From sequence record PP886230.1: a stretch of DNA of 64,000 bases; one strand, 5' to 3'. The position numbers and the translations under genes are program-made. Below the pieces are notes generated by a model, which was not told the DNA's origin, searched no databases, and was given only the letters and a program-made list of their open reading frames with translations. This document shows positions 38,081 through 40,164 of this stretch, piece by piece (within the stretch, counting starts at the first letter, position 1; each line of letters starts with the position of its first letter).

Positions 38081-38208
<128 letters not shown>

Positions 38209-38212
38209 AAAT

Positions 38213-38314
<102 letters not shown>

Positions 38315-38318
38315 AACC

Positions 38319-38479
38319 ATGACGCATGAAGAATGGATGAATGACATTAATTTTAGATATGCAGGTTTCGGTAACTGGAGAAAGTATCATTGGGAAATCA
38401 TGTCAGACCCAGCAGAATACGATAAACTTATAAACCATGAAGCGTATCCGTGGTTCTTTATTGAAATAATGGTACGAAC

Positions 38480-38483
<4 letters not shown>
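38319..38483 (+). CDS. MTHEEW-family micro-protein 4 (not in ORF track)
   Basis: 54 aa MTHEEWMNDINFRYAGFGNW...PWFFIEIMVRT. Confidence 0.7.
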
Positions 38484-38645
<162 letters not shown>

Positions 38646-38653
38646 AAAAAAAG

Positions 38654-39062
<409 letters not shown>

Positions 39063-39067
<5 letters not shown>

Positions 39068-39085
39068 CTAAATAATTCAGTACTG
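39063..39085 (+). repeat. 23-bp promoter repeat copy 2 (one mismatch, no -10)
   Basis: CTTGACTAAATAATTCAGTACTG followed by GAGGA and a 9-codon ORF (39097-39126). Confidence 0.8.
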
Positions 39086-39124
39086 AGGATATTAATATGT
39101 TTAAAGATGAACGTCCAGATTTGT

Positions 39125-39162
<38 letters not shown>

Positions 39163-39168
39163 GAATTC

Positions 39169-39510
39169 CACAATCAGACGTATATGGTGTAAGTTACGTC
39201 GATGCAATCCAGAACAAGATCTCTGGTACTCTAGGAAGTGGTGAATGTTAACCTAGACGGGTTTGATAATTGGACGATAGGCAATTATTACTTGACTAGC
39301 AGGTTTAAACTAGAGGTGACTATCCTTCACCAAACTGGAAAACCGGATGGACTTTTATTTAAAAGGGTAAGGCGTGGAAATATGTTTACAGTAGTTGCTT
39401 TTAGTATCCTGTACGCCCCACGTCAAGGTAGCCGAAAGGCAAGTTAAAACGGGTGGTTATAAAGCTGAATTAACAGCGACGTTTAAAAGCGTCACCATCC
39501 ATTTTTTTTT
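39169..39510 (+). ncRNA. Candidate structured ncRNA, about 340 nt, family unknown
   Basis: Own consensus promoter, at least 8 stems incl. GCC-GAAA-GGC tetraloop, 9-T end; GC richer than flanks. Confidence 0.7.
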
Positions 39511-39526
39511 AATTAAAGTTGGTGAT

Positions 39527-40164
<638 letters not shown>

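What the first reader, a model, noticed from the sequence alone, without database searches (positions are those of the whole stretch)
39169..39510. Unannotated ~340-nt structured RNA with its own promoter and terminator inside the tRNA region
Seen: consensus promoter TTGACT-17-TATAAT (39134-39162), then stems GACGTA/TACGTC (39177-82/39195-200), CCAGA/TCTGG (39209-13/39222-26), CTAGG/CCTAG (39231-35/39252-56), GGCGT/ACGCC (39371-75/39413-17) and a GCC-GAAA-GGC tetraloop (39431-40). A multibranch closes it: GGGTGG/CCATCC (39451-56/39495-500) enclosing GCTG/CAGC and GACG/CGTC, followed by nine Ts. The ORFs called here (39238-39447 and the 5' part of 39395) lack an RBS and look like shadows. I find no tRNA, tmRNA, RNase P or group I hallmarks. 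Established: large ncRNAs such as GOLLD and ROOL occur among phage tRNA genes, but I cannot assign this to them. Inference: a new phage ncRNA class.
Basis: partly seen in the sequence, partly recalled or inferred. Interest (0 to 1): 0.8.

Follow-up and report, generated by a model that had tools for sequence, protein, structure and literature searches.

The report
Phage stable-RNA operon: three RNA modules
The flagged 340 bases are non-coding, but they hold two independent structured RNA genes and a small tRNA-like end piece rather than one RNA, and the first gene belongs to an undescribed pseudoknotted RNA family that sits inside the tRNA gene arrays of five unrelated phage groups.

Summary
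The window is Escherichia jumbo phage vB_EcoM_E9.1 (Asteriusvirus). The promoter, most stems and the T-run are real, and no Rfam family matches. The region is modular, not a single RNA.

- **Module A (39164-39351):** a ~188-nt RNA with seven helices, an H-type pseudoknot, a 5'-end/loop pseudoknot and a probable loop-loop contact. Covariation is strong: 94.8% of cells paired, 18 pairs with compensatory changes. It occurs on the tRNA strand inside tRNA arrays of Rak2-like, T4-like (Bragavirus, Aeromonas phages), T5-like and Stephanstirmvirinae phages. In four of these groups it starts at or within three bases of a tRNA 3' end.
- **Module B (39368-39445):** a long hairpin plus a GNRA hairpin, found only in Rak2-like phages.
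- **Module C (39451-39500, then T9):** a 50-nt tRNA-like three-way junction. It recurs at the ends of stable-RNA units and also appears in Klebsiella podophages.

Relatives carry A only, B only, or neither, so the cassette is accessory. ORF 39238-39447 is not conserved as a reading frame.

Best reading: an early stable-RNA operon matured by tRNA-processing enzymes, analogous in context to T4 rnaC/rnaD. Function is unknown; I favour a trans-acting accessory RNA.

The parts
39134..39162 (+). Sigma-70-type early promoter TTGACT-17-TATAAT with a TG extension. The spacer carries the CAGTACTG motif that recurs in this phage group.
   Evidence: 11/12 matches. The same promoter is fused directly to module B in JNE01, and similar promoters precede the RNA units in L014, L015 and RaK2.
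39164..39351 (+). Module A: a ~188-nt structured RNA running from AAUUCCAC to CCGGAUGGA. It is a member of a new family found in phage tRNA arrays.
   Evidence: Covariance model R1 finds one copy in the window (217.5 bits) and one in each of 20 other loci. Covariation. Boundaries come from the BLAST limits in other lineages and from flanking tRNAs.
39168..39241 (+). Pseudoknot PKa: 5'-end CCAC (39168-71) pairs with GUGG (39238-41) in the loop of P3.
   Evidence: The pair reads CCAC:GUGG in the enterobacterial group (read from the alignment; the script cut the leader short for these rows), CCUCA:UGAGG in KP13-16 and AGCAC:GUGCU or GCAC:GUGC in Aeromonas phages.
39173..39203 (+). P1 hairpin (39173-82 with 39195-203, one bulged A). 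Its loop carries the conserved motif GGYGUA.
   Evidence: The hairpin is kept with different sequences in Mm5, KP13-16 and the Aeromonas phages.
39209..39226 (+). P2, a peripheral hairpin of variable length.
   Evidence: It is replaced by other hairpins in SdyM006, the T5-like phage, KP13-16 and the Aeromonas phages.
39230..39257 (+). P3 (39230-35 with 39252-57).
   Evidence: 100% paired, and 6 of 6 pairs have changes on both sides.
39265..39289 (+). P4 (39265-71 with 39283-89). Its loop carries the motif GACGAUA, present in every lineage aligned.
   Evidence: 4 pairs with double changes; alignment.
39290..39313 (+). H-type pseudoknot. S1 is 39290-94 with 39300-04. S2 is 39296-99 with 39310-13. 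The A-rich third loop is 39305-09.
   Evidence: both helices are 100% paired, and pairs take the forms AU/CG, CG/AU/GC, UA/AU and AU/GC.
39315..39331 (+). P7 hairpin (GGUGA/UCACC). The loop triplet at 39322-24 probably pairs with the P1 loop at 39186-88.
   Evidence: the fourth pair is G-C, A-U or U-A; the loop-loop triplet is 100% paired, with GU/GC/AU and UA/UG/CG forms.
39311..39337 (+). Alternative helix, 39311-13 with 39335-37. It is mutually exclusive with S2.
   Evidence: 100% paired, with UG/UA/CG and AU/UA forms. One search shows the same column covarying with both partners.
39352..39367 (+). AU-rich linker between A and B. It is a probable processing site (inferred).
   Evidence: Sequence. 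RaK2-like phages have a promoter inserted here.
39368..39445 (+). Module B: a long irregular hairpin closed by 39371-77 with 39418-24, followed by the GNRA mini-hairpin at 39431-40.
   Evidence: KP13-7 carries a compensatory G>A with C>T. The module stands alone behind the promoter in JNE01.
39451..39500 (+). Module C: a tRNA-like three-way junction. The 7-bp closing stem is 39451-57 with 39494-500. Hairpin 1 is 39464-67 with 39474-77. Hairpin 2 is 39478-82 with 39489-93 and abuts the closing stem with no unpaired base between them.
   Evidence: Further copies lie after tRNAs and RNA units in RaK2-like phages and in the podophage Klyazma.
39502..39510 (+). T9 run after the junction. Together with module C it probably ends the operon.
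   Evidence: It is weaker or interrupted in RaK2-like copies and absent in Klyazma.
39527..39898 (+). Real downstream gene (123 aa, unknown function). It is not part of the RNA.
   Evidence: full-length match to phrog_38341.

Best explanation
The region is an early stable-RNA operon of a Rak2-like jumbo phage.

Host RNA polymerase starts at the 39134-39162 promoter. It transcribes module A, module B and module C, and stops at or near the T9 run.

The precursor is then cut into separate stable RNAs by the host enzymes that mature tRNA arrays. This step is inferred from three observations: A starts at or within three bases of a tRNA 3' end in four lineages, the A-B linker is AU-rich, and C has a tRNA-like acceptor/T-type stack.

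A is the functional core of the finding. It is a compact, multiply pseudoknotted ~188-nt RNA of a previously undescribed family that is exchanged horizontally between unrelated lytic phages carrying tRNA arrays.

I think A most likely acts in trans as an accessory RNA that binds a host component of tRNA or translation metabolism, or of an RNA-directed defence. This is inference only. The two mutually exclusive covarying helices suggest it can change conformation.

B and C are separate accessory modules. C serves as an end or processing cap of stable-RNA units.
For: **Identity**
- The region is 100% identical to phage E9.1.

**Modularity**
- BLAST limits split the query at position ~200.
- EJP2 has A only, followed by tRNA-Ser.
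- JNE01 has B only, fused to the same promoter.
- G17 has neither.
- RaK2-like phages have a promoter between A and B.

**Family A**
- Model R1 hits range from 145 to 217 bits in 21 loci from five phage lineages.
- A always lies on the tRNA strand, and it starts at or within three bases of a tRNA 3' end in Bragavirus, the T5-like phage, KP13-16 and the Aeromonas phages.

**Structure**
- 94.8% of cells are paired, against 24-45% in the slid controls. 18 pairs have changes on both sides, and 0 of 500 shuffles reach the observed values.
- The pseudoknots and the loop-loop contact are supported.
- G-U pairs (for example GU:15 with GC:6, and UG:20) place the RNA on the + strand.

**Not coding**
-.

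**Module C**
-.

**No known family**
- Rfam; ARAGORN; T4 rnaC/rnaD; no E. coli match.
Against: - No transcript data exist for any of these phages, so the 5' and 3' ends, processing and stability are all inferred.
- The predicted transcription start (about 39168-39170) lies at the very edge of the 5' pseudoknot strand.
- The function is unknown. No partner protein, ligand or target was found.
- Diversity is limited to about five lineages, so some covariation counts reflect only a few evolutionary events.
- The loop-loop contact rests on 3 base pairs (10 of 500 shuffles reach the observed pairing and covariation score, 26 of 500 the double-change counts).
- C is not followed by a T-run in every copy, so 'terminator' is not its only role, or not its role at all.
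Confidence: 0.6

Rival explanations
1. One ~340-nt ncRNA of a single new class. A, B and C would be domains of one functional molecule.
For: In the window there is one promoter, no promoter or terminator between A and B, and one T-run at the end. A+B+C is conserved as a block in most Asteriusvirus genomes.
Against: A alone occurs in four other lineages and in EJP2. B+C alone occurs in JNE01. C alone occurs after tRNAs and in podophages. Alcyoneusvirus has a promoter between A and B. No covarying pair links A with B or C.
Confidence: 0.1
2. Module A is a cis-acting sensor (riboswitch-like or tRNA-sensing) that controls read-through into, or processing of, the downstream RNAs by switching between helix S2 and the alternative helix.
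For: Two mutually exclusive helices both covary. The fold is complex with conserved single strands, as in aptamers. A is usually followed by further tRNAs.
Against: No terminator or other expression platform follows A in any lineage. The downstream neighbour differs between lineages: Asp, Ser, Thr, Glu or module B. No Rfam riboswitch matches. No ligand is suggested by the gene context.
Confidence: 0.12
3. Module A is a self-processing ribozyme that frees itself or its tRNA neighbours from the array transcript.
For: Its 5' end abuts a tRNA 3' end and is drawn into a pseudoknot. The size and pseudoknotted core resemble ribozymes.
Against: No match to any self-cleaving ribozyme family in Rfam. 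The helix order does not fit HDV-like, glmS, hammerhead, twister or hatchet layouts (compared from my own knowledge). In Asteriusvirus A follows a promoter rather than a tRNA. Host RNase P, RNase E and exonucleases are enough for array maturation.
Confidence: 0.06
4. The region is protein-coding (ORF 39238-39447 and/or the long form of ORF 39395-39898), as several GenBank records annotate.
For: ORFs of 69 and 167 codons exist. 'Hypothetical protein' features overlap the region in many records.
Against: The frame has in-frame stops in all four Klebsiella-phage homologues (RaK2, K64-1, KP13-7, L015), plus a frameshift in RaK2 and K64-1. Substitutions are not concentrated at third positions. There is no Pfam or PHROG match, whereas both flanking genes match PHROGs end to end. 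The ORF spans the A/B boundary, which is broken in EJP2, JNE01 and G17.
Confidence: 0.02
5. It is a DNA-level element (a homing-endonuclease target or mobile cassette, an origin, or a promoter array), and the RNA folds are incidental.
For: The module boundaries are sharp, and A is 85-93% identical between unrelated phages, which implies recent lateral transfer. Homing-endonuclease genes lie nearby in some loci.
Against: Compensatory changes keep the helices. Frequent G-U pairs would be A-C mismatches on the other strand or in DNA cruciforms. The pseudoknot and loop contacts covary. Mobility explains the spread, not the conserved fold.
Confidence: 0.05

Closest known systems
Bacteriophage T4 rnaC (species 1) and rnaD (species 2) stable RNAs
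   Same: Both are small stable RNAs encoded within a phage tRNA gene region, on the tRNA strand, next to tRNAs. The T4 RNAs still have no known function (PMC3014915 and PMC9697503). In T4 two RNAs also lie side by side, as A and B do here.
   Different: There is no sequence similarity, and model R1 finds nothing in the T4 tRNA region. A is longer (188 versus 139/119 nt) and has pseudoknots. A has its own sigma-70 promoter in the window.
GOLLD and ROOL large ornate RNAs
   Same: Both are structured non-coding RNAs often found next to tRNA genes in phages and prophages, with unknown function (PMC12286853, listed; the association itself is from my own knowledge).
   Different: Neither Rfam model matches. 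GOLLD and ROOL are about 600-800 nt, against 188 nt here. The host range differs, and no shared motif was seen.
tRNA and tRNA-like 3' elements such as mascRNA
   Same: Module C has a 7-bp closing stem directly abutting a 5-bp hairpin. That is the 12-bp arrangement of the tRNA acceptor and T arms. It also occupies positions that tRNAs occupy in other phages, for example directly upstream of A in RaK2.
   Different: It has no D arm and no anticodon arm, its T-type loop is not the tRNA consensus, and no CCA is encoded. ARAGORN and the Rfam tRNA model do not call it. Cleavage by RNase P is untested.
H-type pseudoknot RNAs (tmRNA PK1, riboswitch aptamers, frameshift signals)
   Same: S1/S2, with a one-base first loop and an A-rich third loop, has the classical H-type layout.
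   Different: There is no tag reading frame, no tRNA-like domain within A, and no downstream expression platform or slippery site. No family matches.

Membership tests
Any Rfam 15 family (including GOLLD, ROOL, RNase P, 6S, tmRNA, group I, riboswitches, self-cleaving ribozymes) | A covariance-model score at or near the family's gathering threshold | tested here: not met
   No match in 39164-39510 at gathering scores or up to E = 10. None lies over module A in seven other loci up to E = 5.
tRNA / tmRNA | A cloverleaf with an anticodon arm, or a tRNA-like domain plus a tag reading frame | tested here: not met
   ARAGORN calls six tRNAs in the window and none in 39164-39510. A candidate in-frame reading after the pseudoknot is not conserved in Aeromonas phages (read from the alignment).
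tRNA-like element (module C only) | A 7-bp acceptor-type stem directly abutting a 5-bp T-type hairpin | tested here: met
   The minimum-free-energy fold gives this layout in three copies, and the helices covary.
tRNA-like element (module C only) | Recognition and cleavage by RNase P, or CCA addition | not testable with these tools
   No CCA is encoded. This needs an in vitro RNase P assay.
T4 rnaC / rnaD | Sequence or structure homology to the T4 RNAs | tested here: not met
   blastn with word size 7 finds only chance 8-16-nt matches. R1 finds no hit in the T4 tRNA region.
T4 rnaC / rnaD | Location inside a phage tRNA array on the tRNA strand | tested here: met
T4 rnaC / rnaD | Accumulates as a discrete stable RNA during infection | not testable with these tools
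   No transcriptome of an A-bearing phage was found in the literature searches.
Intrinsic terminator (module C + T9) | A stable stem immediately followed by a U-run | tested here: inconclusive
   The window has a 7-bp closing stem, one A, then T9. The consensus scan does not call it because the structure is branched. Other copies have interrupted T-runs or none.
Protein-coding gene | A reading frame conserved in homologues, with third-position bias | tested here: not met
   (in-frame stops in all four, a frameshift in two, and substitution counts such as 8/6/4 by codon position). (no family).

The most novel reading that the evidence does not exclude
Module A is a new class of catalytic or switching RNA, or a trans-acting counter-defence or translation-hijacking RNA. 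It has a compact fold with two pseudoknots and a loop-loop contact. It is passed between unrelated lytic phages as a tRNA-sized cassette. Its two mutually exclusive, covarying helices reflect a functional conformational change triggered by a tRNA, a small ligand or a host protein.
Probability: 0.3. Interest if true: 0.85.

Novelty: new variant of a known kind. Interest (0 to 1): 0.6.

Why it matters
- **A long-standing gap.** Stable RNAs of unknown role have been known in phage tRNA regions since T4 rnaC and rnaD, and none has been explained. Module A gives that problem a much better handle.
- **Signs of selection.** A is strongly structured and 85-93% identical between T4-like, T5-like and jumbo phages, which implies recent lateral transfer and selection.
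- **Natural genetic controls.** Within one genus it is present or absent in near-isogenic relatives: A+B, A only, B only, or none.
- **Possible outcomes.** Complex pseudoknotted RNAs of this size are often ribozymes, aptamers or RNP scaffolds, so a defined function would add a new RNA class to phage-host biology.
- **Practical use.** About 60 or more GenBank phage genomes annotate spurious 'hypothetical proteins' over these RNAs. The two covariance models built here could correct that.

Tried and rejected
- **Rfam.** Gathering and permissive scans of the window, the region and seven homologous loci found nothing over A, B or C.
- **T4 rnaC/rnaD homology.** None by blastn or by model R1.
- **tmRNA.** A GACGGG-type motif and the pseudoknot suggested it. 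There is no tRNA-like domain in A, no conserved tag frame and no ARAGORN call.
- **RNase P-like P4 pairing** (CGGGUUU with AAAACCG). It is not kept in KP13-16 or the Aeromonas phages (read from the alignment).
- **Pairing of the 3' tail GGAUGG with the P7 loop.** Broken in Bragavirus and the T5-like phage.
- **CsrA-type GGA motifs.** Not conserved in the Aeromonas phages.
- **Small ORF after the GAGGU motif.** There is no start codon, and the motif is paired.
- **Mimicry of a host RNA.** No blastn match in 5,426 E. coli genomes.
- **Wider family search.** Motif scans of viral, metagenome and genome collections returned only the known isolates plus two metagenome contigs, and no bacterial genome.
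- **Three-way-junction motif in viral contigs.** Four of the five new hits were chance matches inside coding sequence.
- **Literature searches.** Seven searches found no description of these RNAs.
- **Idea noted only.** The GACGAU in the P4 loop could act as an Asp 'specifier', with UGGN in the 3' tail as in T-box RNAs. The flanking tRNAs are not consistent, so I do not claim it.

Full report
**Where the window comes from**

The 901 bases around the finding are 100% identical to Escherichia phage vB_EcoM_E9.1. This is a 368-kb Rak2-like jumbo phage, and its close relatives are 121Q and PBECO4 (Asteriusvirus). The finding lies in the phage's tRNA region. ARAGORN finds six tRNAs between 37017 and 42071, all on the + strand and none in 39164-39510.

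**Checking the observation**

- The promoter TTGACT-17-TATAAT (39134-39162) scores 11 of 12 with a TG extension.
- The stems at 39177/39195, 39209/39222 and 39231/39252 are real.
- The GAAA hairpin, the closing multibranch and the nine T's are real.

One stem needs correcting. GGCGT/ACGCC is not the supported pairing. A double change in Klebsiella phage KP13-7 (G>A together with C>T) and the minimum-free-energy fold support GGCGTGG (39371-77) with CCACGTC (39418-24).

Single-sequence folding is only mildly better than shuffles (z about -2.4 on both strands). Thermodynamics alone would therefore not carry the claim. Comparative evidence does.

Rfam 15 gives nothing at gathering scores for the whole window. 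It gives nothing credible up to E = 10 for 38800-39900.

**It is not one RNA**

A sensitive BLAST of 39160-39515 against 50,697 phage records splits the query in two.
- Positions 5-191 (window about 39164-39350) hit T4-like Bragavirus phages of Proteus, Morganella and Shigella, and T5-like Proteus phages, at 85-93% identity. They hit Klebsiella phage KP13-16 and Aeromonas T4-like phages more weakly.
- Positions 201-356 hit only Rak2-like phages.

Nature has done the dissection within the genus.
- EJP2 keeps the first half only, followed at once by tRNA-Ser.
- JNE01 keeps the second half only, joined directly to the same promoter.
- G17 has neither. Its two flanking genes are separated only by the promoter region.
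- Klebsiella Rak2-like phages (RaK2, K64-1, KP13-7) and one metagenome contig have a TTGAAC-17-TATAAT promoter inserted between the halves.

I therefore treat the region as module A (39164-39351), module B (39368-39445) and module C (39451-39500, followed by T9).

**Module A: distribution**

- A covariance model built from 14 sequences (R1) finds exactly one copy in the window, at 217.5 bits.
- It finds one copy in each of 20 other loci, at 145-217 bits.
- It finds nothing in the T4 tRNA region.
- In every annotated locus A lies inside a tRNA array on the tRNA strand, and in the records whose features I examined no feature is annotated over it.
- A begins at or within three bases of the end of an upstream tRNA in four lineages (directly after the encoded CCA in Bragavirus):
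  - Bragavirus, after tRNA-Gly;
  - the T5-like phage, after tRNA-Leu;
  - KP13-16, after tRNA-Leu;
  - the Aeromonas phages, after tRNA-Pro.
- In Bragavirus, the T5-like phage and EJP2 it ends about 10-20 bases before the next tRNA; in KP13-16 and the Aeromonas phages the gap is about 70-90 bases.
- In Asteriusvirus and in contig L014 a promoter takes the place of the upstream tRNA. In RaK2-like phages a copy of module C does.

**Module A: structure**

- On the model-based alignment of 21 sequences, six helices (32 pairs) are 94.8% paired, against 24-45% when partners are slid by 1-3 columns.
- 18 pairs show changes on both sides. No shuffle out of 500 reaches the observed pairing or covariation score.
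- P3 is 100% paired, and all six pairs are compensated.
- S1 and S2 interlock as a classical H-type pseudoknot with a one-base first loop and an A-rich third loop.
- The 5' end pairs with the loop of P3 through three different sequences in different lineages: CCAC:GUGG, CCUCA:UGAGG and AGCAC:GUGCU (the first is read from the alignment).
- A three-pair contact between the P1 loop and the P7 loop is never broken. It takes GU/GC/AU and UA/UG/CG forms, with 10 of 500 shuffles reaching the observed pairing and covariation score. I rate it as probable.
- The 3' strand of S2 can instead pair with 39335-37. That alternative helix is also 100% paired and covaries. One column therefore covaries with two partners, which suggests two conformations.
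- Frequent G-U pairs place the RNA on the + strand.
- Conserved unpaired stretches point to tertiary contacts or a binding surface: GGYGUA in the P1 loop, CGGGNUUG between P3 and P4, GACGAUA in the P4 loop, CCU in the P7 loop, and CNGAUGG at the 3' end.

**Module B**

B is about 90% conserved between Asteriusvirus and Alcyoneusvirus. It folds as a long irregular hairpin followed by the GNRA hairpin. With only two lineages available, support is limited to one compensatory pair plus the fold. In RaK2-like phages a B-like paralogue also lies upstream of A.

**Module C**

C is a 50-nt three-way junction.
- It has a 7-bp closing stem, a 6-base conserved single strand, a 4-bp hairpin and a 5-bp hairpin that abuts the closing stem with no unpaired base between them.
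- It is the minimum-free-energy fold, with z between -3.5 and -5.2.
- Eight distinct copies are 97.7% paired, with six compensated pairs.
- Model R2 finds one copy in the window and three within 1.7 kb in RaK2, K64-1 and KP13-7: after the B-like unit, after B, and directly after a tRNA-Ser.
- In contig L015 a copy directly follows a tRNA-Ser/tRNA-Arg pair.
- It also occurs at 84% identity in the unrelated 50-kb Klebsiella podophages Klyazma and Asterion. There it sits in the leader before the first early gene and has no T-run after it.

C is therefore a mobile element in its own right. The 7+5 base-pair arrangement is that of the tRNA acceptor and T arms. Because C also takes a tRNA's place upstream of A in RaK2, I suspect it serves as a processing or end-protecting cap for stable-RNA units. 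That is inference.

**Not coding**

- The 69-codon ORF 39238-39447 starts on the GUGG strand of the 5' pseudoknot and runs across the A/B boundary.
- Its frame has in-frame stops in RaK2, K64-1, KP13-7 and L015, plus a frameshift in RaK2 and K64-1. Substitutions are spread evenly over codon positions.
- It matches no Pfam or PHROG family.
- Both flanking genes (38714-39067 and 39527-39898) match PHROG families end to end. The 167-codon ORF from 39395 is therefore an over-extension of the gene that starts at 39527.

**How it most likely works**

What is shown:
- a consensus early promoter;
- three conserved structured modules;
- a T-run at the end;
- accessory distribution among close relatives;
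- lateral transfer between unrelated phages.

What is inferred:
- The host polymerase makes one A-B-C precursor.
- The AU-rich linker and the tRNA-like features let host RNase E, RNase P and 3' trimming enzymes release the mature RNAs, as they do for tRNA arrays and for T4's stable RNAs.
- Tucking the 5' end into a pseudoknot would help stability.

For function, I favour a trans-acting accessory RNA that binds a host factor of tRNA or translation metabolism, or of an RNA-targeting defence. The reasons are:
- it travels with tRNA genes;
- it is dispensable within a genus;
- it is under selection on almost every base;
- it resembles nothing in E. coli.

A cis-acting switch and a self-processing ribozyme remain possible but have less support. 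No expression platform follows A, and A fits no known ribozyme layout.

**Comparison with known systems**

- The closest analogues by context are T4 rnaC and rnaD, whose roles are still unknown (PMC3014915, PMC9697503). There is no homology to them.
- GOLLD and ROOL share the association with tRNAs in phages but do not match, and they are three to four times larger.
- No paper describing these RNAs was found in seven literature searches.
- I classify module A as a new family within the known kind 'stable structured RNAs of phage tRNA regions', with an unusually elaborate fold.

**Limits**

- Only about five independent lineages exist, so covariation counts partly repeat the same events.
- Motif scans of the viral, metagenome and genome collections added only two contigs and no bacterial genome.
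- No expression data are available.
- The E-values from my models are rough, as the tool states.

Noticed in passing
window 39064-39126: A second copy of the promoter (TTGACT-18-GATATT, 39064-39093) is followed by a GAGGA ribosome-binding site and a 9-codon mini-ORF (39097-39126). It lies just upstream of the main promoter.
   Followed up: no
window 38319-38483 and 38480-38644: Two tandem, overlapping 54-codon ORFs belong to the same family (phrog_10970, unknown function). JNE01 has three copies in a row.
   Followed up: partly
window 38213-38291: Rfam gives a borderline tRNA match (29.3 bits against a threshold of 29) directly after tRNA-Ser 38119-38208. ARAGORN does not call it. It may be a degenerate or unusual tRNA.
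   Followed up: no
L014 (metagenome contig JACCDR011713278.1), minus strand about 780-600: After module A, a further TTGACC-17-TATAAT promoter drives a different, unidentified structured RNA closed by a stem of about 20 bp. It is followed by tRNA-Arg and a copy of the three-way junction.
   Followed up: no
L031 1166-1241 (Klebsiella podophage Klyazma); L026 3448-3523: The three-way junction (module C) also occurs in 50-kb Zobellviridae podophages. It lies between the terminal repeat and the first early ORF, after a conventional terminator hairpin (seen in the related contig L026), and has no T-run after it.
   Followed up: partly
L007 1-31 (Klebsiella phage KP13-16): The 3' end of a tmRNA gene (Rfam, 26.2 bits, truncated by the locus edge) lies just upstream of this phage's tRNA array.
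   Followed up: no
L015 from about 1828: An ORF with what look like NUMOD/HNH-type homing-endonuclease motifs (judged by eye, no family search run) starts right after a copy of the three-way junction. SdyM006 has a segD-like endonuclease gene two features upstream of module A. Either could explain lateral spread of the cassettes.
   Followed up: no
L032 (phage G17), L023 (JNE01), L024 (EJP2): Within Asteriusvirus the locus between the phrog_34619 and phrog_38341 genes exists in four states: A+B+C, A only, B+C only, and empty. This gives ready-made natural deletion variants.
   Followed up: yes
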